A DNA stretch of 64,000 nt from Macrostomum lignano (Eukaryota): positions 62,001-126,000 of the forward strand of contig NIVC01002150.1 in the NCBI GenBank assembly GCA_002269645.1, in the 5' to 3' direction. The position numbers were made by a program, and so were the translations under genes. Each line of letters opens with the position of its first letter. Position 1 is the stretch's first letter. This document shows, one piece after another, positions 42,401 through 64,000 of the stretch. The notes beneath the pieces are model-generated. The model made no database searches, was not told the DNA's origin, and was given only the letters and a program-made list of their open reading frames with translations.

Positions 42401-45400
42401 ATCACAAACCCATCCTTGTGACGCTGCAAGCACCCTGGACCACCCTTGCCGAGCCCAATAAGTTCCACTGGTCCTGGAAGAAAGCTGACTGGTCCGCCTA
42501 CAGGTCCCTGCTCGGAAGCAGCAAGTCTCCCGCCTTTGCAACGGCATGTTGTCTGCCGCCTCTGCTGCTATTCCGAAAAAGAAAGTCTCTAAGAAGAATA
42601 AGCCGTATTGGGACGAGGAACTGAGCGAACTCAGGAATACCCGGAACCAACTCCGGGAGTCTGGCGCCCCGCCGGACCTCTGGAGGGAAAAGAGCCTTGA
42701 ACTCAGTAAGCTCTGCGCTGACAAGAAAAGAGCGTTCTGGAGGGAGTATGTGCACAAACTGTCAGAATCCTCCGACCCCAAACAGACCTGGAGAACCATC
42801 AAGTGCCTCAACAACGGAGGACAAGGGTCGAACCCCAATGAAATTCTGGTTGTTGACGGACGCGAACTGTGCACTGACAAAGACAAGGCTAACGCCTTCG
42901 GCAGCTACTACAAAGACATCAGCTCCCTTCATCATGACGTTGCTGACCGCAAGTTTAAGGTCAACACTGCCAACAGGCTGGCTAATTACCACTCCGACGA
43001 CCTGAACTACCACCGTCCTTTCACCAAAGGAGAGCTGTGGAGGGCCATCGACAAGCTCGATCCTGGTAAAAAATGCGGTCCTGATGGCATCGAAGCTGCT
43101 TTCTTTATCAATCTCCCTGATTCCTGGCTTAAAGCCTGGCTTAAGATCTTCAATCGCTGCTGGAGCATCGGCCATTGTCCTGGAAACTGGAAAAAGGCCG
43201 TCATCATCCCGCTGCTGAAGGACGGGAAAGACCCCAAAGAATGTGGAAGCTACCGTCCCGTCAGCCTCACCTCTATCTGCTGTAAAATCCTGGAAAGGCT
43301 GATCCTGGACCGTCTCTTTCACTGGCTGGAGCATCACAATAAAATCCTTCCCTGGCAAGCCGGCTTCCAGCGTGGCCGCAGCTGCGAGGAGCAAGTGGCC
43401 CGGCTGGTCCAGGCCATCCAGGACGGCTGGGAACAGTCTCCGCACCTGAAGACCCTTGCAGTTCTGATCGACTGCTCGCGCGCTTTTGACCGCGTCTGGA
43501 GGACCCTGCTTGTCTCCCGTCTAATGGATGAGGGTCTGCCGGCTTGTATGGTGAGATGGTTTGCTAGCTTCCTGGAGGGCAGGTAGATCGCGGTCCGCAT
43601 TGGCAGCACCATCGGCAAATATTGCAGGCTCAGGGAGGGCGTCCCGCAAGGCGCCGTCAGCTGCCCGGTCCTGTTCCTCCTCTACATCAACGCCTGGGCT
43701 GACCACATCGTCCAAGAGGTCGATTACAGTGGATACGCGGACGACCTCGCCATCTGGGCCTCCGGCAGGAATATCACAGATGTCCGTGAGCGCATTCAAA
43801 GGGCCCTCCAACTTATCGAAAAGTGGGCCAAAAATCATCGCATCGAACTCAACCCTTCAAAGACTGAATACTGCCTGTTCTCTCGCAACCGAGCCGATCG
43901 AGACACCACCGTTCATCTCTCGTTGCTTGGGCGTCCTATCCCCAGTAAGCCGGCGCTGAAGTTCCTCGGGGTCTGGATTGACCGCGGACTTCTTTTCGAC
44001 AAACATCTGAGCGAAATCAAGGAAAAAATGCTCCGTCGAACTGCCATCACCAAAGCTTTAGCAAACCGGGATTGGGGATGGGATCGCCTCCTTCTCCTCA
44101 AAGTCTACCGTGCTTTGGTCGAGTCGGTGATCTGGCATGCTGCATCGGCCTGGACGCCCTGGTTGTCCAAGACTCGCCTGGATGAACTGGACCGCGCCCA
44201 AAGGGAGGCGCTGCGCACCATCACCGGCCTGCCAGGATCCACCCCCATGGAAGCTATTTACCTGGAGGCTCAGGTCGACCCTATCAGCGTTGAGGCCCGC
44301 AGGCGTGCTCTGCTCACCTACGAGAAAGCCATCCGTCGCCCTCTCAGCGACCCGTTTCGCCAGATCTGTGAAAAACACTCGAACGTCCGACTCGCGGCCA
44401 ACAGAGGCCTGCGCGAACAAGCGAGGCGCATCTGCGATTCCATGATGCCGCTCCCACGTATGCCCTTCCACCTTACAGCCGTCCACCCTGGGCCTCACTC
44501 GTCGACCAGGGCATCAACTGTTTCACCGATCTGCCAGACCTGGGAGCCACTTCGACTGAACAAACTCTTGCAGCCATTGAGCAACGCTGCCCAGGATTCT
44601 GCACCTACTACACCGATGGCTCGGCCACCGGAGGGGTCGAAAACGGCGGAGCCGCTTGGATCCTCCTCGACCATGATGGCACCAGCCGTCGCCGCGGGCA
44701 CGCAGCAGCTGGTCGCTGGTGCAACTCCTACGAAGCCGAATTAATGGCCATCAAGCTCGCCCTGGAAGACATTATCAGCTCCGAACCGCGCCATGCCGTC
44801 ATACTGACCGACAGCCAGAGCGCCATCGCCGCCATTAAAGCTGACCGTCCAACCCTCAACCTGCGGCTTGAGCAAGTTAAAGATCTCCTCGCTAACGCAG
44901 CCATGCACACGAAGATTACCCTGCAATGGGTTCCGGGACACTCGGGAGTGCCCGGTAACGAACTGGTCGACGCAGAGGCCAAGCTCGCGGCCACACTGCC
45001 TCAAGACCTAAAGAGCTAAAGAGCGCATCCGCCATCATCTCAAGTACCGCCCAACCCTTCATGGGCACTTGGCCGAGGTCTATGGTAAAACGATCTCCTT
45101 CCAGCAGGGACCGCGTCGCCAACAAATCCTCGTGGCGCAGGTCAGAGCAGGCCACTGCCCTGACTCCAACTATTATCGCAACCGCACCGACATCACCGAA
45201 GGCGGCCCCTGCCGACTTTGCCTGGATGTTCCGGACCAATTTCACCTCTGGACCTGCCCTAAGCTCGAAGCTAATCGGCGCAACATCGGCGTCACTAGTC
45301 TGAGTGACTTTGCACGTGGTGACTTGGTGGCGCAGCTCCTGGGAGCCGTCGACTGGCGGCCCCTGTGAGTTGCTCACCGCAGACAACAACAACAACAGCA

Positions 45401-46754: not shown

Positions 46755-47090
46755 ACAGACAGAGGCAGCCAGCTGCAGACAGAGGCGCCAGCTGCAGACA
46801 GAGGCGCCAGCTGTACAGACAGAGGCGCCAGCTGCAGACAGAGGCAGCCAGCTGCAGGCAGAGGCAGCCAGCTGCAGACAGAGGCAGCCAGCTGCAGACA
46901 GAGGCGCCAGCTGCAGACAGAGGCAGCCAGCTGCAGACAGAGGCGCCAGCTGCAGACAGAGGCAGCCAGCTGCAGACAGAGGCGCCAGCTGCAGACAGAG
47001 GCAGCCAGCTGCAGACAGAGGCGCCAGCTGCAGAGAGAGGCAGCCAGCTGCAGACAGAGGCGCCAGCTGTACAGAGAGAGACGCCAGCTA
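46755..47090. repeat. Minisatellite, alternating 19/20-nt units GCCAGCTGCAGACAGAGGC(A)
   Basis: About 17 copies; the family recurs at 48770-48950 and 61310-61340. Confidence 0.94.
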
Positions 47091-48237: not shown

Positions 48238-48950
48238 ACAGAGGGGTTGCCTGCTACAGAGGGGTTGCCTGCTACAGAGGGGTTGCCTGCTACAGAAGGG
48301 GTTGCCTGCTACAGAGGGGTTGCCTGCTACAGAGGGGTTGCCTGCTACAGAGGGGTTGCCTGCTACAGAGGGGTTGCCTGCTACAGAGGGGTTGCCTGCT
48401 ACAGAGGGGTTGCCTGCTACAGAGGGGTTGCCTGCTACAGAGGGGTTGCCTGCTACAGAGGGGTTGCCTGCTACAGAAGGGGTTGCCTGCTACAGAGGGG
48501 GTTTCCTGCTACAGAAGGGGTTGCCTGCTACAGAAGGGGTTTCCTGCTACAGAAGGGGTTGCCTGCTACAGAAGGGGTTGCCTGCTACAGAAGGGGTTTC
48601 CTGCTACAGAAGGGGTTGCCTGCTACAGAAGGGGTTTCCTGCTACAGAAGGGGTTTCCTGCTACAGAAGGGGTTGCCTGCTACAGAAGGGGTTTCCTGCT
48701 ACAGAAGGGGTTTCCTGCTACAGAAGGGGTTGCCTGCTACAGAAGGGTTGTCTGCTACAGAGAGAGGCGTTAGCTGCAGAGAGAGGCCCCAGCTGCAGAG
48801 AGAGGCCCCAGCTGCAGAGAGAGGCCCCAGCTGCAGAGAGAGGCGCCAGCTGCAGAGAGAGGCGCCAGCTACAGAGAGAGGCGCCAGCTACAGAGAGAGG
48901 CGCCAGCTACAGAGAGAGGCGCCAACTGCAGAGAGAGGCCCCAGCTGCAG
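48238..48950. repeat. Compound minisatellite: 18-19-nt GAGGGGTTGCCTGCTACA grading into CAGCTGCAGAGAGAGGCGC
   Basis: About 28 copies of the first unit, then about 9 of the second. Confidence 0.94.
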
Positions 48951-49319
48951 AAGTCCTTGCGGGTATAGAATCATAAAACCCCACGCGGGTAAAAATATTG
49001 ATAGCACAGTTGCAAAAATCGGTGGCAACATTTTCTGTATAGCGAAACTGCTTTGGTTTAATTTAATGAAAAATCAGGACTGAAACTGCTCCAAGCTATT
49101 CTTAGCTTTTCAGAAGAAGAGCCTGATGGCATCCCATGCAGTCTACTATGCGCATGTTATATGTATAGCATTTTAGCAGTGGTCGAACATTGATTTTAGT
49201 CTCTTTTTAAATAAGAGCAGCGCTCACATGTAGCTAGCCTGGATATGTAGCTCTTCTTCTCATTCCACCAGCTGTAAGAGTGATTAGAGTTAGGATGCTC
49301 TCTCCTAGTTCAGCTCCAG

Positions 49320-50575
49320 TCACATGATGCTTTCGAATAGCTCACATGATGCTTTCGAATAGCTCACATGATGCTTTCAAATAGCTCAAATGATGCTTTC
49401 GAATAGCTCAAATGATGCTTTCGAATAGCTCACATGATGCTTTCAAATAGCTCAAATGATGCTTTCGAATAGCTCAAATGATGCTTTCGAATAGCTTAAA
49501 TGATGCTTTCGAATAGCTCAAATGATGCTTTCGAATAGCTTAAATGATGCTTTCGAATAGCTCAAATGATGCTTTCAAATAGCTCAAATGATGCTTTCGA
49601 ATAGCTCCAATGATGCTTTCGAATAGCTCAAATGATGCTTTCGAATAGCTCAAATGATGCTTTCGAATAGCTCAAATGATGCTTTCGAATAGCTCAAATG
49701 ATGCTTTCGAATAGCTCAAATGATGCTTTCGAATAGCTCAAATGATGCTTTCGAATAGCTTAAATGATGCTTTCGAATAGCTCAAATGATGCTTTCGAAT
49801 AGCTCAAATGATGCTTTCGAATAGCTCAAATGATGCTTTCGAATAGCTCAAATGATGCTTTCGAATAGCTCAAATGATGCTTTCGAATAGCTCAAATGAT
49901 GCTTTCGAATATCTCAAATGATGCTTTCGAATAGCTCAAATGATGCTTTCGAATAGCTCAAATGATGAATTTCGAATAGCTCAAATGATGATTTCGAATA
50001 ACACAAATGATGCTTTCGAATAACACAAATGGTGATTTCGAATAACACAAATGATGATTTCGAATAACACAAATGATGCTTTCGAATAACACAAATGGTG
50101 ATTTCGAATAACACAAATGATGATTTCGAATAACACAGATGATGCTTTCGAATAACACAAATGATGCTTTCGAATAACACAAATGATGATTTCGAATAAC
50201 ACAAATGATGCTTTCGAATAACACAGATGATGATTTCGAATAACACAGATGATGATTTCGAATAACACAGATGATGCTTTCGAATAACACAAATGATGCT
50301 ATCGAATAACTCAAATGATGATTTCGAATAACACAAATGATGATTTCGAATAACACAAATGATGATTTCGAATAACACAAATGATGCTTTCGAATAACAC
50401 AGATGATGATTTCGAATAACTCAAATGATGATTTCGAATAACACAAATGATGCTTTCGAATAACACAGATGATGATTTCGAATAACACAGATGATGATTT
50501 CGAATAACACAGATGATGATTTCGAATAACACAAATGATGATTTCGAATAACACAAATGATGATTTCGAATAAAA
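49320..50575. repeat. Minisatellite, 21-nt unit ATGATGCTTTCGAATAGCTCA grading into ATGATGATTTCGAATAACACA
   Basis: About 59 copies with a variant switch near 49970. Confidence 0.95.
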
Positions 50576-51194
50576 CAAACTCGTGCTCTAATAAATAAGA
50601 GCGTAAATCTAAAAGTGATTCAAATAACCCAAGATGATGCGCGAGCTGACTTGTTCTAAAATAGTCACATTATGTCACCGGATAAAGTAATAATGCCTCA
50701 CCCACAATGTCTCATCCACAGACAGGGCAGGGCCGCAGGATGCAGGTACTACACATCCTACACAAAATCATTTCTGATATTTCATTCGCATTTCCCAGCT
50801 GTACTGTTTCCATTCTCGGCAGTCTCTCGGACACGCAGCTTCGGTCAGCTACTCGTATATAATCGGCTGTCAAGGACTGGCCGCATCTGCAGTGCTGCAT
50901 GGAAACACACATGTGTTATGCGTGTGTATTTTTAGCGCCTACTGATACAGGAGACTCCCGTCCACAAGAGGGGGTGGTCCTTCCGACCGCGCTTCCTTCT
51001 TAGCTAATGGATTTCATAGCTGGAGCAATAGGAAATGTTTAGTTGACTAAAAATTTATTCTGAATTTTCTCAACTACAGTCAATTCAACAGGTGAAGTAG
51101 AAGGACGCGATGTACTTAAAATCAGATACAAACAGCAGATGTTTGCAGACTTTGCTTAGTGAACTTGGTAAACTGGTGAACTTGCCAGAAGACT

Positions 51195-52808
51195 CTGAGA
51201 TATTGCTTTCGCGCACCAGGCCAGATGTCTCGGGGTCATACTTGACCACCGGCTCAACTGGTCCTTTCACGTGAAAGCAAAAGCCAAGCGTGCCTCAGCC
51301 ATCCTGGCCCAGCTCCGACGAGTACTTGGCTCTTCTTGGGGTCTTTCCCCAAAGCGGCTTTGGTGGACCTACACTTCCGTAGTTAGACCTGTCATTACGT
51401 AGGCCTCGGTTGTCTGAGTTAGCGCTACCCAGGTCAAAAGCCATGCAGATTTGCTCAACAACGATCCAGAGCAGAGCGTTTAGGCTTATCTGCAACGCTA
51501 CCAGGTCCACGCCCTTTGCCGGCATGGGGGCCTTCCTTAATCTACCGCCTCTCGACCTCTTCGTCAGGGGTAAGGCGGCTAGAACGACCCGGCGTTTACT
51601 TGATGCCGGTGTCAAATTCCTTTACATGAGGGCACCTGCTAAGCGGAACCTCGTCCCGCATAGCGACCTGTGTCTCAACATTCTCAACGAGTGTCAGGAC
51701 AATCGCGCCTTCACCGATGGCATTGCCTCAACGCTCAACCTGAGACAACGCTACTCCGTAGCTATCGACTCGCGCGATACCATCAATGACCACTGGAACC
51801 CTGGTGAGCTTCATTGCTATACCGATGGTTCTAAGAAGTCAGCCAACACCGGTTTTGGCGTTGGAATCTTCCTGAACGGGAGGGTCATCGCAACCCACGC
51901 TCAGTACACTGGGGTCAACTCCAGTGTCTTCCAAAATGAAGTTCTCGCCATCAGCTCCTGCACTGCAAAGCTTCTCGCCACTGGCGTAATCGGTAAGAAC
52001 ATCATTTTCCATTCGGACAGCCAAGCTGCCTTGCACACCATCAATTCCGCTACAGTCCTCGAATGTATCAAACTCCTCAACATGTTGGGCTCCACTCACA
52101 AAATTACCCTCAAGTGGGTTCCGGGGCATGTGGGGATCCGAGGAAATGAGTTGGCTGACGCCCTTGCAAAAGTTGGCGCCTCCGGCTCCTCTCTCGGTCC
52201 CGAACCCCTTGTCCCGATTTTTGGCTGTGTCATCGACTCGCGCATCAAAGCGTGGATCAGGACCCAGCACCGCTCGACTTGGGCGAAATGCACTACCTGC
52301 AGACAATCCAGAGGCGCTGTCCCTCAGCCCTCTCACCAGCTCCGGAAGCTCCTCTTGCGCCTCTCGCGCAGAGACAACCGGGCTGCCACCATGACCCTCT
52401 CAGGTCACGGCTGCTTCTCTAGGCACCAATACCTGCAGGGCAACGCCACCAACGCCATCTGCAGTTTCTGTAACTCAGGTGACGAAACCGCTGAGCATTT
52501 CGTCAGCATCTGTCCCGCCTTCACGCGGGCCAGACTCACTTACCTCCGGCCACACATCTATTACTGAAGCGTGCAAACCTGAAAACTTTAATCAGCTCAT
52601 GCGCTACCTCCGGGCCACCCGCAGGGCTGAACTCTCCTTTCCAGAGAGCACCATAGCTGCTGGCGATACTGGGGGACCTCCCTGGGCGGCGCCAACCCTT
52701 CGTCCATAGCGACGCATCGGCCGTTCAGGGATTAGCGGAATGGGCGTTCGCGCCTTCCCGCTGTGTCCCCCCGGGACAGCCCTGCAGCTAAGTCAAAGTA
52801 AGTCAAAG
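51195..52808 (+). mobile_element. 5'-truncated R1/LOA-like LINE (RT C-terminus, RNase H, Zn knuckle, 3' UTR, AAGTC-type tail)
   Basis: RCLGVILDHRLNW...WGLSPKRLWW (in-frame stops follow); RNase H YTDGSK...NEVLAI...HSDSQA...WVPGHVGIRGNELAD; CSFCNSGDETAEHF; tail TAAGTCAAAGTAAGTCAAAG. Clade assignment is from recalled motifs. Confidence 0.82.
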
Positions 52809-52809
52809 A

Positions 52810-52925
52810 CTGGCAAAGGGAGAATTAAGCAAGTAATTAGGGATTTTCGAGGCACCAGGGCAACGGGAGAATTAGGTAATTAGGGATTTCCGAAGCGCCA
52901 AGGCAACGGGAGAATTTCGGTGATT
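52810..52925. repeat. ~43-nt minisatellite (GGGAGAATTAGGTAATTAGGGATTTTCGAGGCACCAAGGCAAC), short copy
   Basis: About 3 units here, about 9 at 59045-59420 (inverted) and about 5 at 61340-61560. Confidence 0.85.
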
Positions 52926-53331
52926 CTTGGGAATCAGTAGCAGCATGTAAAATCCCAATGACTGCGGCAGGAGTTAACAGGAGCCAACAACACTGCCATC
53001 CAGTTTATTTTTACTTCACAACAGTGGCCCTGGAGGATTTTCTCACTACTATTTCTAGCCTCTGTGCAGTAGGACCGTAAAACACCACCAAAAGGAAACC
53101 CGGGCAGTTGCATAAGGGAATTCCGGGACGTAATAGTCGAATAGTCGCTATTGTTATCTATTTTAAGCTATTTGCGATGTTGGCTTTTCCCCGGCAATCT
53201 TGCTCGAGCCGGAGCCAGATAATATAAATTGAAGCAGATTCGGGCAGAAAATTGTATAGCAAAATTGATTTAGAAAATCTGATTTGGTGAAATATTTGAC
53301 AGCACGTATCAGCTGAGCAGTTTGCTGTAGG

Positions 53332-53829
53332 ATGCAGTTTTTCTGCTTAATCTCCCCTCTGCTGGCCCTCTGGATTTTCCCCGCTCCCATTCTCGCAGCG
53401 CCCCTCGGAGCCGGCGATCTCTTCAGGTCGTGCAGCGCCTCGGTGCCCGGCCTGTCGCGGGACAAGCTGGCATCGGGCCAGCAGATTTTCTCTCTGGCCC
53501 CACCGGCCGAGCTGCGAGGCGGCCCAGCAAGCGTGACCGAACCGCCTGTGGGCGACGGCGACTCTCCGTGCCCGTTCGCTCAGACGAAGAACTTCACCTT
53601 CGAGGGCAAGCCGTGCCTTGGCGGCGCTTCCTGCTTCACGGACCGGGTCTGCCTGTCCGCAAAACCGAAGTCTCTGGATGGGGACAGGTACCGCTGCAGC
53701 AAGGGCGTCCGGCTTGAGGAGTTCAGCCAGGTGGCCTTTGTGTACATTGGCTCATGTAACGGCTTGCACCTGTATGAGCGAGTGATAGTGCACCCACAGA
53801 TGTGCGTACTGCTAACACTTGAGCATTGA
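53332..53829 (+). CDS. Secreted Cys-rich protein, 165 aa, copy 1 (possibly a cystine-knot cytokine, IL-17/Trunk-like)
   Basis: Hydrophobic N-terminus MQFFCLISPLLALWIFPAPILA-A (signal peptide-like); 8 Cys in the mature part (34, 80, 95, 101, 107, 122, 142, 158); NFT sequon. TATAAA at 53223-53228 and AATAAA at 54008-54013. The ORF is intact in all three copies. The family call is tentative. Confidence 0.75.
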   Translation: MQFFCLISPLLALWIFPAPILAAPLGAGDLFRSCSASVPGLSRDKLASGQQIFSLAPPAELRGGPASVTEPPVGDGDSPCPFAQTKNFTFEGKPCLGGASCFTDRVCLSAKPKSLDGDRYRCSKGVRLEEFSQVAFVYIGSCNGLHLYERVIVHPQMCVLLTLEH

Positions 53830-54968
53830 ATCTGTTTGTAATTACATGTATTCCTGTTGCATGTCCAGCTACATACTCAGGTGCTTTTCTACCCTGTCAA
53901 TCAATAAGTTTTTGGTTACAGCACCTCTTTTTTTATCCAAGCACTGAATAATTACCATGATTTTCTACTTTCAAACTTGTTTTTGTAATGCTTTTCATAA
54001 ATATGTAAATAAATTAAGCGGATTTTCATCAGGTCTGGTCTGAGCCTGATTGGCCCAGAAATTCAATGAAAAAGATGAAACCTTAAGCTGAAGGCTTTAA
54101 TAAACATTTTCTAGGGAAAAATATTCATACACAAGGGTATGCATGGATTTGTGTGCAGACATATAGTTGACAATAGTTTATAGTCTAATAAACTGCATGG
54201 ACTACTCACAGTTTAGCTGTCCATGTCAGCTAGCCCCGGATATCGTATGTACCCCTATGGAGAATCGTTGCGCACGTTAGACACAATTAAAACAGTGCAT
54301 TGCTTGCTCTTCAACATTGCCCTTATTGAGCAGTATAGTTTCAATGCAGTCCCAGAGCAGGTTCTGCATTTACGTGACGTACACCACACACCTGCAGTTA
54401 TGCACGCGGGAATGCCGCGAAAAGAACTCGCGACGTGTTTTCCGCGCGTTTCATGCATCTCAGATTCAGTTGCTGAATATGGAAGCAGAAAAAATGCATG
54501 GGAATTCCGTTTGCATTCTTTCGTTTCCGGTCATCCCAGATGTTGTGAAACTCGAAGAACGCTTTATTAAATGCTCGAAATGAGGCCAGGTGCAAAGTTC
54601 AAAATGTTGCTATTTTACATGTATATCAATTTTTATATCGGATGCCCTTTTACCGTCCTTTACCGGAGAAGTACCAGTACACTGGATGCATGGCATGCAG
54701 CCCACGAAGCAGGTGTCTCTGCAGTCTGAGCCTTTTTGCGACCACGAGACTATACGAAGCTTTGGGATTATCGAATTTATAAGCGGCTGATGGATGTACA
54801 TTTTGTATCTACTGTAATATGTATAGGCGTACACACAGGGACTACTAAATTCTGTCAGTAGTCCCTAGGCGTACATGCTATATACAGTATGTACCGTTCG
54901 TACATGCAGATAACATAGTCAAGGACTACTAAAGTTACTAATGGTCCTTGAATACGAGCGTATATAGC

Positions 54969-57050
54969 TGATGTGTATTCCTAAGACGGTTCGTTCCGTC
55001 TAATCGTATTTTTGTGTTAACAAAAAGGAGAGGAAATTATTCGTTATCGTATAAGAGCCCTTGTCTCCCTGCGCTCGTTCGTTATTAATTCCATTTTCCC
55101 TCGTGCGCCCAGCTCTTTAGTATAACTGTCTGGGTTTTCGAGAATTATGACCATAGATAGTTCAATTGCATGCGTGAAAATTCATAGTTAAAATCCATAT
55201 CAACTTCCCCCCTCCTTAAATAGAGCACTCTCCACTTGGTTGGTCATATTTCCTCAATCAGTCGATTAGGTGGCATTCCTTTGTTTTGTCTTTTAGACCG
55301 ACGGACATGCTGTTGGTGTTGGCGCGCTCCACTTGACTGTATCTCGACTGGATCTATCGCTTGCTGTCTGAATGGTACCAAGTTGCGCGCAGTCCAAACC
55401 TTTCCATTGTCCAATCGGTATGTGATGTTGCCAACCACTTTGATGACTTTGAATGGAGAGGTGAAAGGGGACCTGCCCTTTGGCACATGTGGCAAACGAA
55501 CACGTACCAGATCACCGACCTTGAAGTGTCGCTTGAATACTTGGTGCGGTTCCTGTTTTAATGTGGTCACTAGCTCGTTCTGTGTTTCATTGACCTCGGT
55601 TGCTCTGCGAGGCTGGAAATTTGCCCTTATGTCGCGGCCAAATAGCAGTTTTGCAGGTGTGTCTCCGTTCTCATTCGGCGTTGTGCGGTAGCTGAATATA
55701 GTCTGTTGCATGCCCTCTTCGTAACTCTTCCGCTCAACCTCGAAGGTTTGCGCCGCATACTTCAGCGTTCGATTGAAGACTTCTACCTTGCCGTTTCGTC
55801 TTGGCTCATACAGTGGGACACATTCGTGTCGGATATCTCGTGAGGCGAGAAAGTCCTCCATTTCTCTGGAGACAAAGTTGCTTCCATTGTCAGATACCAA
55901 GGTATCAGGATTGCCGAAGCGATTGAAAACCTCTGTCAGCCAGTGGATCAGCCTTGGTGATCTCGTGTCTCCAGTGAGAAGGATCTCAGGATATGACGAG
56001 TAGTAATCAATGAGCGCGACAATGAATCGTTGATTTTGTGGAGCGATTGCAAACGGCACGGTGATGTCAATCGCGAGCTTTGACCAGGGTCGGTCAGGCT
56101 TTTCAACCGGTCCACCGTTTGGCGCGATAATTTTGTGCGACTTAGCACTGTCCTGGCATGGTAGACAGAACTTGACATAGTTCGTTATGGCGCTATCCAT
56201 ACCTTGCCACCAGTATGCCGATCGCAGAAGTCGTTTCATTCGTACGATTCCCGGGTGTCCTTCGTGGACACGCTTCAGGATTGTCTTCACTAGGCTGCTG
56301 GGCGGCAAGATTTGTTCACCACGGATCAGGGTTCCGTTTTCTATCGTCAGTTCGTCTTGTATCTGTGCAAAGGCCTTGAGCTCTGTCTTCTTTTAATCAA
56401 TTGTTTGGGAGCTTTGGACGGCCTTCATAACCTCCTGGTCGTTAGCTTCTGCAGGTTTCTTGTAGAAGGGGTGTCAATATCGTTTGCAAGCAGAATGCTG
56501 CGGATAGTAGCATCGTCTTCGTTATCCGCACTGACCAGTCCATCGACGACTGGTAGTCTGGATAGGGCGTCAGCCACTTAGTTGGTGCTTCCGGGCTTGT
56601 AGACTATGTCGTAGTCGAATTCGGACAGCCGAACCTACCGACGTGTTAATTTTTCTGACTTCTTCTTGTTACTGTGATGTCGTAGGAGGCTCGTTAGTGC
56701 AGAATGATCAGTTTGTAAAGTGAAATGTCGTCCCAGCAAATAGCTCGTATTTTGCCAAGTGTTCACATGCCCAGACGCAGGCAAGTGCTTCGCGCTCGTC
56801 CACAGCGTAGTTTTGTTCCCGCTCGGAAAGTGCATGGGATGCAAATGCTATTAGAAGCTCGGTTTCGGCTTGTGTTCGTGACAAAACTGCACCGATGCTG
56901 ACATCTGAAGCGTCGGTTGTTGTCAAGATCGTGGGAAGGTTAGGATCGAAAATGGCCCGTTCCAGTCGTTCCTGAAGTATCCGTTTTATGCGGTCAAAGG
57001 CCGATTGTTGTTCACATCCCCAGATAAACTTCCGTTTACCTTTTCTTTTG
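54969..57050 (-). mobile_element. 3' half of a Ty3/Gypsy LTR retrotransposon (RNase H remnant, integrase, PPT, 3' LTR)
   Basis: RNase H TDASDVSIGAVL...YAVDEREALACVW...TDHSAL (frameshifted, with stops). Integrase ORF 55244-56308: HEGHPG...CLPC, LAID, LVSDNGSNF, NGKVEVFN, and a GPY/F-like tail. PPT AAGGAGGGGGGAAG at 55204-55217. LTR TGAT...ATCA at about 54969-55202. 5' half missing. Confidence 0.88.
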
Positions 57051-58149
57051 TTTGTTTCTTTTGTTTGTTTATCTTTTGTTAAACATACTGTATATAGCAT
57101 GCACGCCCAGGGACTACTGACAGAATTTAGTAGTCCCTGTGTGTACGCCTATACATATTACAGTAGATACAAAATGTACATCCATCAGCCACTTATAAAT
57201 TCGATAATCCCTAAGCTTCGAATAGTCTCGTGGTCGCAAAAAGGCTCAGACTGCAGAGACACCTGCTTCGTGGGCTGCATGCCATGCATCCAGTGTACTG
57301 GTACTTCTCCGGTAAAGGACGGTAAAAGGGCATCCGATATAAAAATTGATATACATGTAAAATAGCAACATTTTGAACTTTGGACCTGGCCTCATTTCGA
57401 GCATTTAATAAAGCGTTCTTCGAGTTTCACAACATCTGGGATGACCGGAAACGAAAGAATGCAAACGGAATTCCCATGCATTTTTTCTGCTTCCATATTC
57501 AGCAACTGAATCTGAGATGCATGAAACGCGCAGAAAACACGTCGCGAATTCTTTTTGCGGCATTCCCGCGTGCATAACTGCAGGTGTGTGGTGTACGTCA
57601 CGTAAATGTAGAACCTGCTCTGAGACTGCATCGATACTATACTGCTCAATAAGGGCAATGTTGAAGAGCAAGCAATGCACTGTTTTAATTGTGTCTAACG
57701 TGCGCAACGATTCTCCATAGGGGTACATACGATATCCGGGGCTAGCTGACATGGACAGCTAAACTGTGAGTAGTCCATGCAGTTTATTAGACTATAAACT
57801 ATTGCCAACTATATGTCTGCACACAAATCTATGCATACCCTTGTGTATGAATATTTTTCCTTAGAAAATGTTTATTAAAGCCTCCAGCTTAAGGTTTCAT
57901 CTTTTTCATTGAATTTCTGGGCCACTCAGGCTCAGACCAGACCAGATGAAAATCCGCTTAATTTATTTACATATTTATGAAAAAACTTTACAAAAACAAG
58001 TTTGAAAGTAGAAAAAAACATGGTACTTATTCAGTGCTTGGATAAAAAAGAGGTGCTGTAACCGCAAAAACTTATTGATTGACAGGGTAAAAGAGCACCT
58101 GAGTATGTAGCTGGACATGCAGCAGGAATACATGTAATTACAAACAGAT

Positions 58150-58647
58150 TCAATGCTCAAGTGTTAGCAGTACGCACATCTGTGGGTGCACTATCACTCG
58201 CTCATACAGGTGCAAGCCCCTGCATGAGCCAATGTACACAAAGGCCACTTGGCTGAACTCCTCAAGCCGGACGCCCTTGCTGCAGCGGTACCTGTCCCCA
58301 TCCAGAGACTTCGGTTCTGCGGACAGGCAGACCCGGTCCGTGAAGCAGGGAGCGCCGCCAAGGCACGGCTTGCCCTCGAAGGTGAAGTTCTTCGTCTGAG
58401 CGAACGGGCACGGAGAGTCGCCGTCGCCCACAGGCGGTTCGGTCACGCTTGCTGGGCCGCCTCGCAGCTCGGCCGGTGGGGCCAGAGAGAAAATCTGCTG
58501 GCCCGATGCCAGCTTGTCCCGCGACAGGCCGGGCACCGAGGCGCTGCACGACCTGAAGAGATCGCCGGCTCCGAGGGGCGCTGCGAGAATGGGAGCGGGG
58601 AAAATCCAGAGGGCCAGCAGAGTGGAGATTAAGCAGAAAAACTGCAT
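58150..58647 (-). CDS. Secreted Cys-rich protein, copy 2
   Basis: 165 aa; differs from copy 1 at P9T, S100P, K111E and N143R. Poly(A) signal at 57962-57967. Confidence 0.75.
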   Translation of the reverse strand: MQFFCLISTLLALWIFPAPILAAPLGAGDLFRSCSASVPGLSRDKLASGQQIFSLAPPAELRGGPASVTEPPVGDGDSPCPFAQTKNFTFEGKPCLGGAPCFTDRVCLSAEPKSLDGDRYRCSKGVRLEEFSQVAFVYIGSCRGLHLYERVIVHPQMCVLLTLEH

Positions 58648-59044
58648 CCTACAGCAAACTGCTCAGCTGATACGTGCTGTCAAATATTTCACCAAATCAG
58701 ATTTTCTAAATCAATTTTGCTATACAATTTTCTGCCCGAATCTGCTTCAATTTATATTATCTGGCTCCGGCTCGAGCAAGATTGCCGGGGAAAAGCCAAC
58801 ATCGCAAATAGCTTAAAATAGATAACAATAGCGACTATTCGACTATTACGTCCCGGAATTCCCTTATGCAACTGCCCGGGTTTCCTTTTGGTGGTGTTTT
58901 ACGGTCCTACTGCACAGAGGCTAGAAATAGTAGTGAGAAAATCCTCCAGGGCCATTGTTGTGAAGTAAAAATAAACTGGATGTCAGTGTTGTTGGCTCCT
59001 GTTAACTCCTGCCGCAGCCATTGGGATTTTACATGCTGCTACTG

Positions 59045-59420
59045 ATTCCCAAGAATCACCGAAATTCTCCCCTTGCCTGGGCGGTTCGGGAATCTCTAAT
59101 TACCTAATTCTCCCGTTGCCTTGGCGCTTCGGAAATCCCTAATTACTTCATTCTACCGTTGCCTTGGTGCCTCAAAAATCCTTAATTACCTGATTCTCCC
59201 GTTGCCTTGGCGCTTCGGAAATCCCTAATTATTTAATTCTCCCGTTGCCATGGCGCTTCGGATATCCCTAATTATTTAATTCTCCCGTTGCCTTGGTGCC
59301 TCATAAATCCCTAATTAACTAATTCTCCCGTTGCCCTGGTGCCTCGAAAATTCCCTAATTACCTAATTCTCCCGTTGCCCTGGTGCCTCGAAAATCCCTA
59401 ATTACTTGCTTAATTCTCCC
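59045..59420. repeat. ~43-nt minisatellite, expanded copy in the right arm
   Basis: About 9 units (gccttgg at 59161, 59204 ...). Confidence 0.9.
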
Positions 59421-59429
59421 TTTGCCAGT

Positions 59430-60965
59430 CTTTGACTTACTTTGACTTAGCTGCAGGGCTGTCCCGGAGGGGACACAGCGGGAAGGCGCGAACGCCCATT
59501 CCGCTAATCCCTGAACGGCCGATGCGTCGCTATGGACGAAGGGTTGGCGCCTCCCAGGGAGGTCCCCAGGGTCGCCAGCAGCTATAGTGCTCTCTGGAAA
59601 GGAGAGTTCAGCCCTGCGGGTGGCCCGGAGGTAGCGCATGAGCTGATTAAAGTTTTCGGGTTTGCACGCTTCAGTAATAGATGTGTGGCCGGAGGTAAGT
59701 GAGTCTGGCCCGCGTGAAGGCGGGACAGATGCTGACGAAATGCTCAGCGGTTTCGTCACCTGAGTTACAGAAACTGCAGATGGCGTTGGTGGCGTTGCCC
59801 TGCAGGTACTGGTGCCTAGAGAAGCAGCCGTGACCTGAGAGGGTCATGGTGGCAGCCCGGATGTCTTTGCGCGAGAGGCGCAAGAGGAGCTTCCGGAGCT
59901 GGTGAGAGGGCTGAGGGACAGCGCCTCTGGATTGTCTGCTGGTGGTGCATTTCGCCCAAGTCGAGCGGTGCTGGGTCCTGATCCACGCTTTGATGCGCGA
60001 GTCGATGACACAGCCAGGAATCGGGACAAGGGGTTCGGGACCGAGAGAGGAGCCGGAGGCGCCAACTTTTGCAAGGGCGTCAGCCAACTCATTCCCCCGG
60101 ATCCCCACATGCCCCGGAACCCACTTAAGGGTGATTTTGTTGGTGGAGCCCAACATGTTTAGGAGTTTGATACAGTCGAGGACTGTAGCAGAATTGGTGC
60201 TGCAGCCACTGATGGCGTGCAAGGCAGTTTGGCTGTCCGAATGGAAAATGATGTTCTTACCGGTTACGCCAGTGGCGAGAAGCTCTGCAGTGCAGGAGCT
60301 GATGGCGAGAACTTCATTTTGGAAGACACTGGAGTTGACCCCAGTGTACTGAGCGTGGGTTGCGATGACCCTCCCGTTCAGGAAGATTCCAACACCAAAA
60401 CCGGTGTTGGCTGACTGCTTAGAACCATCGGTATAGTAGTGAAGCTCACCAGGGTTCCAGTGGTCATTGATGGTATCGCGCGAGTCGATAGCTACGGAGT
60501 AGCGCTGTCTCAGGTTGAGCGTTGAGGCAATGCCATCGGTGGAGACGCGATTGGCCTGACACTCGTTGAGAATGTTGAGACACAGGTCGCTATGCGGGAC
60601 GAGGTTTACCCCTGACGAAGAGGTCGAGAGGCGGTAGATTAAGGAAGGCCCCATGCCGGCAAAGGGCGTGAACCTGGTGGCGTTGCAGATGAGCCTAAAC
60701 GCTCTGCTCTGGATCGTTGTTGAGCAAATCTGCATGGTTTTTGACCTGGGTAGCGCTAACCCAGACAACCGAGGCGTACGTAATGACAGGTCTAACTACG
60801 GAAGTGTAGATCCACCAAAGCCGCTTTGGCGAAAGACCCCAAGAAGAGCCAAGTACTCGTCGGAGCTGGGCCAGGATGGCTGAGGCACGCTTGGCTTTTG
60901 CTTTCACGTGAAAGGACCAGTTGAGCCGGTGGTCAAGTATGACCCCGAGACATCTGGCCTGGTGC
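59430..60965 (-). mobile_element. Mirror copy of the truncated R1/LOA-like LINE
   Basis: ORF 59671..60768 carries the RNase H motifs. It has a ~70-nt deletion and an extra 18 nt (ISGCST) relative to the left-arm copy. Confidence 0.82.
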
Positions 60966-61211
60966 GCGAAAGCAATATCTCAGAGTCTTCTGGCAAGTTC
61001 ACCAGTTTACCAAGTTCACTAAGCAAAGTCTGCAAACATCTGCTGTTTGTATCTGATTTTAAGTACATCGCGTCCTTCTACTTCACCTGTTGAATTGACT
61101 GTAGTTGAGAAAATTCAGAATAGTAATTTTTAGTCAACTAAACATTTCCTATTGCTCCAGCTATGAAATCCATTAGCTAAGAAGGAAGCGCGGTCGGAAG
61201 GACCACCCCCT

Positions 61212-61295
61212 TGAGGGCTAGCCGAATGGGCGACCCTCGCCTCCCTGCTGTGTCTACGGACCCACCCTGCAGCTAAGTCAAGTAAGTAAGTCAAG
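61212..61295 (+). mobile_element. ~85-nt 3' stub of a related LINE subfamily at the palindrome boundary
   Basis: AGGGCTAGCCGAATGGGCG...CCCTGCAGCTAAGTCAAGTAAGTAAGTCAAG aligns to the LINE 3' end at 52727-52808. Confidence 0.7.
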
Positions 61296-61339
61296 GGGTT
61301 TCCGCTACAGACAGAGGCCCCAGCTGCAGAATGAGGCGC

Positions 61340-62919
61340 CAGCTGCAGAGAGAGGCGCCAGGAAATCCCTATTAGGTAATTAGGGATTTTCGAGGCGACA
61401 AGGCAACGGGAGAATTATGTAATTAGGAATTTTCGAAGCGCCAAGGCATGGGGAGAATTAGGTAATTAGGGATTTTCAAGGCGCCAAGGCAACGCGAGAA
61501 TTAGGCAGGTAATTAGGAAACTTCGAGGTACAGAGGCAAGGGGAGAATTTAGGTGATTCTTGGGAATCAGTAGCAGCATGTAAAATCCCAATGACTGCGG
61601 CAGGAGTTAACAGGAGCCAACAACACTGACATCCAGTTTATTTTTACTTCACAACAATGGCCCTGGAGGATTTTCTCACTACTATTTCTAGCCTCTGTGC
61701 AGTAGGACCGTAAAACACCACCAAAAGGAAACCCGGGCAGTTGCATAAGGGAATTCCGGGACGTAATAGTCGAATAGTCGCTATTGTTATCTATTTTAAG
61801 CTATTTGCGATGTTGGCTTTTCCCCGGCAATCTTGCTCGAGCCGGAGCCAGATAATATAAATTGAAGCAGATTCGGGCAGAAAATTGTATAGCAAAATTG
61901 ATTTAGAAAATCTGATTTGGTGAAATATTTGACAGCACGTATCAGCTGAGCAGTTTGCTGTAGGATGCAGTTTTTCTGCTTAATCTCCACTCTGCTGGCC
62001 CTCTGGATTTTCCCCGCTCCCATTCTCGCAGCGCCCCTCGGAGCCGGCGATCTCTTCAGGTCGTGCAGCGCCTCGGTGCCCGGCCTGTCGCGGGACAAGC
62101 TGGCATCGGGCCAGCAGATTTTCTCTCTGGCCCCACCGGCCGAGCTGCGGGGCGGCCCAGCAAGCGTGACCGAACCGCCTGTGGGCGACGGCGACTCTCC
62201 GTGCCCGTTCGCTCAGACGAAGAACTTCACCTTCGAGGGCAAGCCGTGCCTTGGCGGTGCTCCCTGCTTCACGGACCGGGTCTGCCTGTCCGCAGAACCG
62301 AAGTCTCTGGATGGGGACAGGTACCGCTGCAGCAAGGGCGTCCGGCTTGAGGAGTTCAGCCAGGTGGCCTTTGTGTACATTGGCTCATGTAACGGCTTGC
62401 ACCTGTATGAGCGAGTGATAGTGCACCCACAGATGTGCGTACTGCTAACACTTGAGCATTGAATCTGTTTGTAATTACATGTATTCCTGCTGCATGTCCA
62501 GCTACATACTCAGGTGCTTTTCTACCCTGTCAATCAATGTTTTTGCAGTTACAGCAACTCTTTTTTATCCAAGCACTGAATACGTACCATGTTTTTTTCT
62601 ACTTTTAAACTTGTTTTTGTAAAGTTTTTTTATAAATATGTAAATAAATTAAGCGGATTTTCATCTGGTCTGGTCTAAGCCTGATTGGCCCAGAAATTCA
62701 ATGAAAAAGATGAAACCTTAAGCCGAAGGCTTTTTTAAACATTTTCTAAGGAAAAATATTCATACACAAGGGTATGCATGGATGTGTTCAGACATAATAG
62801 TTGGTTGGCAATAGCCCCGTTTATAGTCTAATAAACTGCATGGACTACTACTGTTTAGCTGTCCATGTCAGCTAGCCCAGTATATCGCATATGCATGGTG
62901 AATCGTCGCGCACGTTAGA
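61340..62919 (+). repeat. Third (direct) copy of the segment carrying the secreted-protein gene
   Basis: Homologous to ~52830-54281. Homology ends at CACGTTAGA (62919), where a LINE begins. Confidence 0.9.
61965..62462 (+). CDS. Secreted Cys-rich protein, copy 3
   Basis: 165 aa, intact; residues T9, P100, E111, N143. AATAAA at 62643-62648. Confidence 0.75.
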   Translation: MQFFCLISTLLALWIFPAPILAAPLGAGDLFRSCSASVPGLSRDKLASGQQIFSLAPPAELRGGPASVTEPPVGDGDSPCPFAQTKNFTFEGKPCLGGAPCFTDRVCLSAEPKSLDGDRYRCSKGVRLEEFSQVAFVYIGSCNGLHLYERVIVHPQMCVLLTLEH

Positions 62920-64000
62920 GAGACTGGTGCTCTGGCGCCTCCTCTCTGTGGAACTGAAGAACAAGCCGCTCAGTGAGAACCAGCACGCCTTTCGGGCAGG
63001 CAGGTCCACGGAGAGCGCGCTTCACGTTCTGGTTGACATGCTGGAGAAAGCCGTTCTTGGTAATGGCTACGCTCTCGCTGTCTTCCTCGACATTGTTGAA
63101 GCCTTCGATAATGTCCTCTTTGAGGCTTTTGACAGAGCTCTACGTGCTAGAGGAACCCACTCGCACCTCACCCGGTGGATCATGTATATGATCAGCCACC
63201 GTACTGCCACCGCACACCTGTTGGGCCACCAACGGACGGTAACCGTCTGCAAAGGCAGCCTCCAGGGCGGTGTCCTCTCTCCAGTTCTCTGGAACATGGT
63301 CATCGATGAGCTCCTCCAGGACAGCCATCTTGACCCCATCCTCAAGGTCGGTTACGCCGATGATGTCACAGCCGTGGCATCCGGACCGTCACCTGAAACC
63401 CTTAGGGACCTGCTGCAAAACTGTATTCGCTCTGCTGAACGATGGGCGGACAGGTGCGGCCTCAGACTCTCTGAGACCAAAACTGTCGCGATCATGTTCA
63501 CCAGCAGGGTAAACTGGCGTATTCGCCCACTAAGCTTTACGGGATGGAAATTCCATCCTGTAAGCAAACCAAGTGTCTCGGCGTTACGCTGGACCACCGG
63601 CTGAGCTGGTCCACCCACGTCCAGGCCAAAACCAAAAAAGCCCTCGCGATTCTTGCGCAGCTGCGCAGAGCCGTCGGCACCACCTGGGGCCTCACCCCGA
63701 AGCGGCTCTGGTGGATCTACACCGCAATGGTCCGACCGGCCGTTACTTACGCCGGCCTGGTCTGGACCAGCGCCTTGCAGATTAAAACCTGCCACGAAGC
63801 CCTCAAAAAGGTGCAGGGACGTGCGTGCCGCATGATCCTGAATGCCCCGCTCTCTACTCCCTTTGACGGCCTCAACGCCTTTCTTTGCCTCCCGCCTCTG
63901 GACATCTTTGTCCGTCGCGAGGCTGCTAAAACCACCCGCCGGCTCATCGAGGCTGGCGTTAGCTTCAAGCCACTAAGAGCGATGACGAAGCGCAAGCTCC
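62915..64000 (+). mobile_element. 5'-truncated R1/LOA-like LINE, RT region (frameshifted, runs off window)
   Basis: LERLV...NQHAFRAGRSTE...VFLDIVEAFDNV...QGGVLSPVLWN...GYADD...CLGVTLDHRLSW...WGLTPKRLWWIY. Related to but distinct from the arm copies. Confidence 0.85.

What the first reader, a model, noticed from the sequence alone, without database searches (positions are those of the whole stretch)
53223..62648. Three intact copies of an orphan, intronless secreted Cys-rich gene, possibly an IL-17/Trunk-like cytokine
Seen: each copy has a TATA box, a signal-like N-terminus, 8 mature Cys, an N-glycosylation sequon and AATAAA. All three ORFs are intact while the neighbouring TE ORFs carry stops and frameshifts. 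Variants are mosaic: copy 3 shares T9/P100/E111 with copy 2 but N143 with copy 1. The pattern CPF....N......P....A.C-x5-C...C...V....C.G...Y....V....C recalls invertebrate IL-17/Trunk/PTTH cystine-knot proteins, though the terminal CxC has only one Cys. Inference: a recently amplified signalling, immune or seminal-fluid protein under conversion or selection.
Basis: partly seen in the sequence, partly recalled or inferred. Interest (0 to 1): 0.75.

Follow-up and report, generated by a model that had tools for sequence, protein, structure and literature searches.

The report
Triplicated orphan secreted cysteine-rich gene
Three nearly identical copies of a small single-exon gene for a secreted protein with eight cysteines lie among transposon debris. 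The gene looks real and belongs to no described family, but nothing tested supports the proposed IL-17/Trunk cytokine identity.

Summary
Three intact 165-codon ORFs lie at 53332-53829 (+), 58150-58647 (-) and 61965-62462 (+). They are 98-99% identical, and each has TATAAAT at -109 and AATAAA about 180 nt after the stop.

Copies 1 and 2 are the arms of a 3.9-kb inverted duplication. Copy 3 is an older direct copy. Each copy follows the tail of the same non-LTR retrotransposon family and a 43-bp minisatellite.

A roughly 925-bp tract covering promoter and CDS differs by 1.4% or less, while the flanks differ by 3-20%. The non-coding promoter is the most uniform part, which points to gene conversion rather than selection on the protein.

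The gene is probably real. An exhaustive search of 1.84 billion proteins found one divergent relative in a brackish microbial-mat metagenome (30% identity). It is also single-exon, has a signal peptide, and keeps all eight mature cysteines. The same search found a near-identical exon inside a junk gene model, which implies a fourth copy.

Pfam, a PDB profile search and hhalign against IL-17A/F gave nothing. The defining CxC motif is absent in both homologues. AlphaFold2 confidence was too low (pLDDT about 41) to classify the fold.

This is an ordinary kind of gene, a lineage-restricted secreted Cys-rich protein, in a new family. Function and organism remain unknown.

The parts
53332..53829 (+). 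Copy 1 CDS, 165 codons (private changes P9, S100, K111)
58150..58647 (-). Copy 2 CDS, 165 codons (private R143 plus 2 synonymous changes)
61965..62462 (+). Copy 3 CDS, 165 codons (2 private synonymous changes; protein carries the majority residue, shared with one other copy, at all four variable amino-acid positions)
53223..53229 (+). TATAAAT at -109 of copy 1. The same motif is at 58750-58756 (-) for copy 2 and 61856-61862 (+) for copy 3
54008..54013 (+). First AATAAA after the stop of copy 1 (+179). Equivalent sites are 57962-57967 (-) for copy 2 and 62643-62648 (+) for copy 3
52931..53856 (+). High-identity tract (promoter, 5'UTR and CDS; 1.4% or less pairwise difference, no indels, zero differences across 53025-53355). 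Equivalent tracts are 58123-59048 (-) and 61564-62489 (+). Inferred to be a gene-conversion tract
50969..54892 (+). Arm A of the inverted duplication: non-LTR 3' part, 43-bp minisatellite, gene, and about 1.06 kb of 3' flank
57083..61211 (-). Arm B of the inverted duplication (95.7-98.2% identical to arm A)
54893..57082 (-). Spacer between the arms: fragment of an LTR-retroelement pol (RT-RNase H 56708-57100, integrase 55244-56308)
61219..62919 (+). Copy 3 segment: diverged non-LTR tail piece (61219-61287, 78%), 43-bp repeats (61371-61520), gene, and 457 bp of 3' flank. It is cut at 62919 by another non-LTR element
51410..52567 (+). Non-LTR retrotransposon C-terminal ORF (RNase H plus CCHC), directly upstream of copy 1. 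Its twin at 59671-60768 (-) lies upstream of copy 2
52812..52930 (+). 43-bp minisatellite between the TE tail and the gene (2-3 units). The corresponding arrays are 59063-59407 (8 units) and 61371-61505 (3 units)
62891..64000 (+). 5'-truncated non-LTR element of a related subfamily (RVT_1; 62% aa identity to the arm A element). It ends the copy 3 homology

Best explanation
The three ORFs are copies of a genuine single-exon gene. It encodes a small secreted, probably N-glycosylated protein. The precursor is 165 aa: a signal peptide of about 23 residues, a Pro/Gly/Ala/Ser-rich linker containing one Cys, and a C-terminal domain of about 86 residues with 7 Cys that is predicted to be beta-rich. 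The family is undescribed and taxonomically restricted.

Shown: the copies arose by segmental duplication in TE- and minisatellite-rich DNA. One event produced a 3.9-kb inverted pair around a 2.2-kb spacer. An older event produced the direct copy 3. A non-LTR element already sat immediately upstream of the gene and was carried along.

Inferred: a roughly 925-bp tract (promoter plus CDS) is kept nearly identical among all three copies by gene conversion while the flanks drift. All three copies therefore keep an intact promoter and ORF, and the likely effect is a higher dose of one product rather than diversification.

Inferred, weakly: the product acts outside the cell as a ligand or effector stabilised by four disulfides. 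Its target and physiological role are unknown.
For: Coding reality:
- An exhaustive phmmer search of 1.84 billion representatives found P0002 (E 1.4e-11). Re-read from its contig L001, it is a 171-aa single-exon ORF with its own hydrophobic signal peptide.
- It shares 49/163 identical residues with the window protein. Seven mature Cys align exactly and the eighth is offset by one residue. Nucleotide identity by codon position is 0.38/0.58/0.33, and the shuffle z-score is 27.
- L001's flanks share nothing with the window's TE tail or TE proteins, so the ORF is not a TE gene.
- GC3 is 0.75, against 0.36-0.43 in the immediate flanks.
- P0001 holds residues 24-131 at 98% identity inside an otherwise unrelated model that has no Pfam domain. 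This implies a fourth copy in the same or a sister genome.

Duplication architecture.

Conversion:
- Differences are 1-3 of 401 bp upstream, 5-7 of 498 bp in the CDS, and 13-27 of about 450 bp plus 4-10 indels downstream. Fisher p is 2e-8 (copies 1 v 3), 4e-7 (2 v 3) and 0.018 (1 v 2).
- The TE tail 5' of copy 3 is 78% identical.
- The non-coding promoter is more uniform than synonymous sites (pS 1.6-3.2%).
Against: - There is no evidence of transcription or of the protein. The exact products are not on record in 153 billion gene positions.
- Only one divergent relative exists among about 15 billion proteins, and it comes from an unidentified eukaryote on a 1-kb contig.
- pN/pS among the copies (0.17-0.85, from 5-7 changes) cannot be distinguished from neutrality, and copy 1 carries 3 replacements and 0 synonymous changes.
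- All three copies abut the tail of the same TE family with different 5' extents. Retrotransposon 3' transduction would also produce this pattern.
- The function is inferred only from a signal peptide and cysteines.
Confidence: 0.6

Rival explanations
1. The protein is a divergent IL-17 / Trunk / PTTH-type cystine-knot cytokine.
For: The size, secretion, Cys-rich C-terminal domain and predicted long beta-hairpins (residues 132-153) fit in general terms. In a Foldseek run with the low-confidence C-domain model, 9 of 26 sub-threshold hits were cystine-knot factors (NGF, NT-3, TGF-beta2, VEGF, IL-17A/F, IL-25). All had E>=3.5 and TM 0.16-0.30.
Against: - No Pfam family at E<=10 for the window protein, its C-domain, or the 171-aa homologue.
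- The family profile hits no PDB chain at E<=10.
- hhalign against IL-17A/F gave probability 0.1%.
- Neither homologue has the C-terminal CxC. Neither has CxGxC, nor the IL-17 Cx4C paired with CxC. The spacing is C-x14-C-x5-C-x5-C-x14-C-x19-C-x15-C.
- The Foldseek enrichment vanished with the full-length model, and both models have pLDDT about 41.
Confidence: 0.07
2. The copies are passengers of the upstream non-LTR retrotransposon (read-through 3' transduction) or otherwise neutral recent duplicates. The ORFs are intact only because the copies are young or homogenised, and they have no function in this genome.
For: - Every copy directly follows the tail of the same TE family and its 43-bp repeat, and the TE portion is truncated at different 5' points: about 1.8 kb for copies 1 and 2, about 160 bp for copy 3.
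- pN/pS is not significantly below 1.
- The ORF is absent from gene catalogues, except as an exon of a junk model.
Against: - Copies 1 and 2 share both end points and form a palindrome, which indicates DNA-level duplication.
- The three copies lie within 10 kb of each other, whereas retrotransposition disperses copies.
- No poly(A) or target-site duplication is visible at the 3' ends.
- The divergent homologue L001 is TE-free and keeps the signal peptide and all the cysteines. The ancestral gene is therefore functional even if some copies are not.
Confidence: 0.2
3. The copy number is partly an assembly artefact, caused by haplotypes or a chimeric palindrome placed side by side.
For: - The architecture is a palindrome with a short spacer in extremely repeat-rich sequence.
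- Divergence of 2.5-4% between the arms is in the range of heterozygosity in some invertebrates.
Against: - The arms differ by indels and by the number of 43-bp units (2-3 versus 8).
- The spacer is unique TE sequence.
- Copy 3 has quite different flanks (78% identity in the TE tail, and a TE insertion at 62919).
- P0001 shows yet another variant.
Confidence: 0.1

Closest known systems
Interleukin-17 family (Pfam PF06083), including invertebrate IL-17s
   Same: Small secreted glycoprotein with a Cys-containing, beta-rich C-terminal domain. Such genes are often multi-copy in invertebrate genomes.
   Different: There is no HMM or profile similarity. It lacks the Cx4C...CxC arrangement that forms the two IL-17 knot disulfides. 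It has 8 Cys in a different spacing.
NGF / Spaetzle / PTTH / Trunk-type growth-factor cystine knots
   Same: There is a C-x5-C-x5-C cluster in mid-domain (PTTH has C-x7-C-x5-C, from my own recollection). Long beta-hairpins are predicted at low confidence. Sub-threshold Foldseek hits include NGF, NT-3 and TGF-beta2.
   Different: The CxC that is universal in these knots is absent in both homologues. No PDB chain is hit by the family profile. The structural hint was not reproduced with the full-length model.
Taxon-restricted, tandemly duplicated secreted cysteine-rich protein genes in general (salivary, immune, venom and reproductive effectors)
   Same: Signal peptide, even number of Cys, short single-exon CDS, local multi-copy cluster, homogenisation by gene conversion, very narrow phylogenetic distribution.
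   Different: No tissue, expression or activity is known. The copies are nearly identical rather than diversified.
L1-type 3' transduction of flanking genes by non-LTR retrotransposons
   Same: The gene sits directly 3' of a non-LTR tail in every copy, and the TE part has variable 5' truncation.
   Different: The copies are clustered, and two of them form a palindrome with shared end points. No poly(A) or target-site duplication was seen.

Membership tests
IL-17 (PF06083) | Significant match to the IL17 Pfam HMM | tested here: not met
   hmmscan against Pfam-A at E<=10 gave 0 families for all three copies, for the C-domain alone, and for the 171-aa homologue
IL-17 (PF06083) | Profile-level similarity to solved IL-17 proteins | tested here: not met
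   hhalign of family alignment A3 against IL-17A+F (A4; the IL-17A sequence was verified against PDB 5hi3) gave probability 0.1% and E 0.54. The A3 profile hit nothing in the whole PDB at E<=10
IL-17 (PF06083) | Two knot disulfides built from a Cx4C pair and a C-terminal CxC pair | tested here: not met
   The window protein ends ...HPQMCVLLTLEH and the homologue ends ...WTRCSIRALKE. Each has a single Cys and no CxC anywhere
Growth-factor cystine knot (NGF/Spaetzle/PTTH/Trunk/TGF-beta) | Six knot cysteines with CxC (CV-x-CVI) closing the ring | tested here: not met
   The Cys spacing is C-x14-C-x5-C-x5-C-x14-C-x19-C-x15-C in both homologues, with small indels. There is no CxC and no CxGxC
Growth-factor cystine knot (NGF/Spaetzle/PTTH/Trunk/TGF-beta) | Cystine-knot fold | tested here: inconclusive
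   AF2 gave pLDDT 41.5 for the full-length protein and 40.9 for the C-domain, from only 4 aligned sequences. Foldseek against PDB found no hit with E<2. Knot proteins were enriched among sub-threshold hits in one run and absent in the other
Classical secreted protein | N-terminal signal peptide, no other membrane span, even number of Cys in the mature chain | tested here: met
   Both homologues have a hydrophobic core at residues 5-16 (KD 2.4 and 2.7), a maximum 19-residue KD beyond residue 25 of 1.1 or less, and 8 mature Cys. No dedicated signal-peptide predictor was available
Non-LTR 3' transduction product | Copy ends in a poly(A) or TE-type tail after a polyadenylation signal and is flanked by target-site duplications | tested here: inconclusive
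   The 3' ends of copies 1 and 2 abut an LTR-element fragment with no A-run. The 3' end of copy 3 is destroyed by a TE insertion at 62919

The most novel reading that the evidence does not exclude
These ORFs, together with the microbial-mat homologue, are the founding members of an undescribed family of secreted 8-Cys proteins. The family would have either a new fold or a non-canonical knot without CxC, and would act as a lineage-specific extracellular signal (cytokine- or hormone-like) whose dosage is maintained by a conversion-homogenised gene cluster.
Probability: 0.15. Interest if true: 0.6.

Novelty: new member of a known kind. Interest (0 to 1): 0.33.

Why it matters
If the gene is expressed, it adds a new, very narrowly distributed family of secreted disulfide-rich proteins. 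Only two lineages were found among about 15 billion predicted proteins.

It also gives a clear small example of gene conversion keeping the promoter and CDS of duplicates uniform while TE-laden flanks decay.

It does not bear on the evolution of IL-17 or PTTH/Trunk signalling, because membership of those families is not supported. For genome annotation, it is a likely real gene that current catalogues either miss or fuse into a junk model.

Tried and rejected
- **Word-indexed protein searches.** Searches with the window protein and with P0002 found no further relatives.
- **Metagenome contig scans.** The scan with the family alignment and the scan with a degenerate DNA pattern for [DE]GKPCLGGxPC returned only a chance bacterial hit (L002).
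- **IMG/VR scan.** No viral relative was found.
- **Exact-product look-ups.** The three copies and two TE ORFs are not on record. P0001 has no contig on record either.
- **Rfam on the whole window.** There were no hits.
- **Organism identification.** All of the following failed: a host-exon protein search, Pfam and PDB searches of host ORFs, and a literature search for the satellite units.
- **Rab-binding/SHD idea.** My guess that ORF 45404-46030 carries such a motif got no support, so I dropped it.
- **P0003 and P0004.** P0003 is a bacterial repeat protein. P0004 is the three-frame translation of a 58-bp satellite with no DNA similarity to the window. I judged both hits spurious.
- **TE-unit test.** The unit 52900-54950 has no LTR or TIR-like terminal repeats. 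A 17-nt inverted match to the ORF start does not extend.
- **Short shared flank words.** Words of 9-13 nt shared between the L001 and window flanks are at chance level.
- **Structure route.** Both AF2 jobs gave pLDDT about 41, so the Foldseek output is not evidence.
Full report
**1. Observation**

The ORF list shows three intact 165-codon ORFs at 53332-53829 (+), 58150-58647 (-) and 61965-62462 (+). Copy 1 has P9/S100/K111 where copies 2 and 3 have T9/P100/E111. Copy 2 has R143 where copies 1 and 3 have N143.

Each copy has the following features:
- TATAAAT at -109 from the ATG.
- No ATG in the 120 nt before the start.
- An in-frame stop 8 codons upstream of the start.
- AATAAA 179-183 nt after the stop.

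These positions match the finding's start and end coordinates exactly. The N-terminus has a hydrophobic core (residues 5-16, Kyte-Doolittle mean 2.4) followed by PAPILA|AP. There is no second hydrophobic segment.

**2. Architecture of the duplication**

A self-BLAST shows that copies 1 and 2 are not free-standing. They lie in the two arms of an inverted duplication: arm A is 50969-54892 and arm B is 61211-57083, with 95.7-98.2% identity. The arms are separated by a 2.2-kb spacer that is a fragment of an LTR-retroelement pol gene (RT-RNase H and integrase).

Each arm holds four elements in order:
- The 3' part of a non-LTR retrotransposon (RNase H plus CCHC ORF).
- A 43-bp minisatellite.
- The gene.
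- About 1.06 kb of 3' flank.

Copy 3 (61371-62919) is a direct copy at 94.5% overall identity. It is cut at 62919 by a 5'-truncated non-LTR element of a related subfamily. Reading the junctions and a BLAST of the TE 3'UTR show that copy 3 is also preceded by a short piece of the same TE tail (61219-61287). That piece is only 78% identical to its counterpart in arm A.

So in all three copies the gene follows the tail of the same TE family and the 43-bp repeat, which has 2-3, 8 and 3 units respectively. The whole window is exceptionally rich in minisatellites.

**3. Uneven divergence points to gene conversion**

Pairwise differences by region are as follows.

| Region | Copies 1 v 2 | Copies 1 v 3 | Copies 2 v 3 |
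|---|---|---|---|
| 401 bp upstream | 3 | 2 | 1 |
| CDS (498 bp) | 7 | 5 | 6 |
| About 450 bp of 3' flank | 13 | 27 | 24 |

The 3' flank also carries 4-10 indel events, whereas the upstream region and the CDS carry none. There is no difference at all across 53025-53355. The contrast between promoter plus CDS and the 3' flank is significant: Fisher p is 2e-8 for 1 v 3, 4e-7 for 2 v 3, and 0.018 for 1 v 2.

The non-coding promoter (0.25-0.75%) is more uniform than synonymous sites in the CDS (pS 1.6-3.2%). Both flanks of copy 3 are far more diverged than the tract between them. Homogenisation of a roughly 925-bp tract (52931-53856 and its equivalents) by gene conversion explains this better than purifying selection on the protein.

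pN/pS is 0.17-0.85 on only 5-7 changes and is uninformative.

With three sequences every variable site is private to one copy. Here 3 sites are private to copy 1, 4 nucleotides to copy 2, and 2 to copy 3, so no recombination has to be invoked. Likewise, three intact ORFs at about 1% divergence are not evidence of selection.

**4. Is it a real gene?**

Pfam gives nothing at E<=10, and a word-indexed search of 5.8 billion clusters gives nothing. An exhaustive phmmer run over 1.84 billion representatives gave two meaningful hits.

*P0001.* This is an 871-aa UniParc entry (UPI0007A270A0). It contains residues 24-131 of the protein with 2 differences. This part is bounded exactly where the window sequence has AG and GT dinucleotides, and it sits within sequence that has no Pfam domain and no match elsewhere in the window. 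I read it as an ab initio gene model that swallowed a fourth copy in the same or a sister genome.

*P0002.* This is a 158-aa protein with E 1.4e-11, from a 1073-bp contig (L001) of the co-assembled metagenomes of brackish microbial mats at Etang de Berre, France (PMC8605020). Reading the contig shows an in-frame ATG 13 codons upstream. That gives a 171-aa single-exon ORF whose N-terminus is again a hydrophobic signal sequence.

The two proteins compare as follows:
- They share 49 of 163 aligned residues.
- Seven mature cysteines align exactly and the eighth is one residue out of register.
- The block SPCP(F/Y)...(E/D)GKPCLGGxPC is conserved, as is AFVxIGxCxGL.
- Nucleotide identity by codon position is 0.38/0.58/0.33, the signature of protein-level constraint with saturated silent sites.
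- The alignment score is 27 SD above shuffles.

L001's flanks share nothing with the window's TE tail or TE proteins. The ORF is therefore not a transposon gene, and its linkage to the TE is specific to this genome. GC3 of the ORF is 0.75, against 0.36-0.43 in its flanks.

I conclude, at about 0.75, that the ancestral gene encodes a functional secreted protein. Whether all three copies are expressed is untested. No transcript evidence was available, and L001 has microsatellites at both ends, so it looks genomic.

**5. Family assignment**

The IL-17/Trunk/PTTH idea was tested in four ways.
- *Pfam.* No hit at E<=10 for the three copies, for the C-domain alone, or for the 171-aa homologue.
- *PDB profile search.* A profile of the family against all PDB sequences gave no hit at E<=10.
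- *hhalign.* The family alignment against IL-17A plus IL-17F gave probability 0.1%. The IL-17A sequence was checked against PDB 5hi3.
- *Motifs.* Both homologues lack the CxC that closes every growth-factor and IL-17 knot, and both lack CxGxC. The spacing is C-x14-C-x5-C-x5-C-x14-C-x19-C-x15-C, plus one Cys in the linker.

The structure route failed. AF2 with the only available alignment (4 rows) gave pLDDT 41.5 for the full-length protein and 40.9 for residues 76-165.

Foldseek against PDB gave no hit better than E=2. With the C-domain model, 9 of 26 sub-threshold hits were knot cytokines: NGF, NT-3, TGF-beta2, VEGF, IL-17A/F and IL-25, with TM 0.16-0.30. With the full-length model none were. 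I treat the first result as a by-product of the long predicted hairpins. It is a lead at most.

Membership of IL-17 or of the PTTH/Trunk/NGF group is therefore not supported, because a defining feature was tested and not met. A non-canonical knot or a new fold is not excluded.

**6. Mechanism**

*Shown.* This is a conserved single-exon ORF with a signal peptide and 8 Cys. It has been duplicated at the DNA level as a palindrome plus a direct copy, and promoter and CDS are homogeneous within diverged flanks.

*Inferred.* A non-LTR element inserted just upstream of the gene before the duplications. Gene conversion then keeps three (or more) functional copies of one product, which raises dosage rather than diversity. 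The product is secreted, N-glycosylated at N87, held by four disulfides, and acts extracellularly.

*Not known.* The target, the tissue, and the organism. CpG o/e is 0.71 and GC is 49%. Putative exons of a C2-domain gene lie on the minus strand at 9.5-46 kb, which would place the cluster 5' of that gene or in a 5' intron.

**7. Rivals**

- *3' transduction or neutral passenger copies (0.2).* The TE tail is linked to the gene in every copy, with variable 5' truncation. However, two copies share both end points as a palindrome, all three lie within 10 kb, and no poly(A) or target-site duplication is visible.
- *Assembly artefact inflating copy number (0.1).* The arms differ in indels and in minisatellite unit number, and copy 3 has different flanks.
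- *Cystine-knot cytokine (0.07).* See section 5.

**8. Novelty and verdict**

The family is undescribed. It has no Pfam or PDB relative, and only two lineages were found among about 15 billion proteins. The kind, however, is ordinary: a taxon-restricted, locally amplified, secreted Cys-rich protein. It is worth an annotation and an expression check. It is not evidence for a new IL-17 or Trunk relative.

Noticed in passing
window 409-50572 (for example 14485-24938, 10809-13642, 6646-7903, 37100-38701, 49320-50572): There are about 30 separate minisatellite arrays with 13-61-bp units. They include a 10.4-kb array of a 34-bp unit (308 copies, 99% matches) and a 2.8-kb array of a 44-bp unit. Together they fill a large share of the window.
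   Followed up: partly
window 52785-52810, 59425-59450 region, 61268-61295; 43-bp arrays at 52812-52930, 59063-59407, 61371-61505: The non-LTR element ends in a CTGCAGCTAAGTCAA(A)GTAAGTCAA-type tail, which is followed by a 43-bp minisatellite of variable unit number (2-3, 8, 3). It is unclear whether the minisatellite belongs to the TE 3' end or to the gene's upstream region.
   Followed up: partly
window 9505-10494 (-), 28218-28997 (-), 34238-34894 (-), 45404-46030 (-): Long minus-strand ORFs look like exons of a host gene. The first ends in the start of a C2 domain (Pfam E 2.4e-5) after a (QQPQTL)n repeat. The others have no Pfam or PDB match, and a protein search with 45404-46030 found nothing.
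   Followed up: partly
window 40154-44995: This is another, unrelated non-LTR retrotransposon on the plus strand (RVT_1 at 42546-43586, RNase H-like similarity at 44591-44995), with a partial second copy at 40154-40484.
   Followed up: no
window 53332-53348 and 54483-54499: A 17-nt inverted match (16/17) links the first codons of the ORF to a site 650 nt downstream of its stop, in both palindrome arms. It does not extend (E 0.055), so I took it as chance.
   Followed up: yes
L003 8750-11170 (ENA ERZ24894579 ctg18714l): A 58-bp satellite, translated in three frames (P0004), resembles residues 22-79 of the protein (39% identity, E 1.4e-4). There is no DNA similarity to the window, so it is probably compositional.
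   Followed up: partly
window 46756-47089, 48754-48951, 61290-61360: The same CAGAGAGAGGCGCCAGCTG-type 19-20-bp minisatellite recurs at three places, including directly between the TE tail and the 43-bp repeats upstream of copy 3.
   Followed up: no
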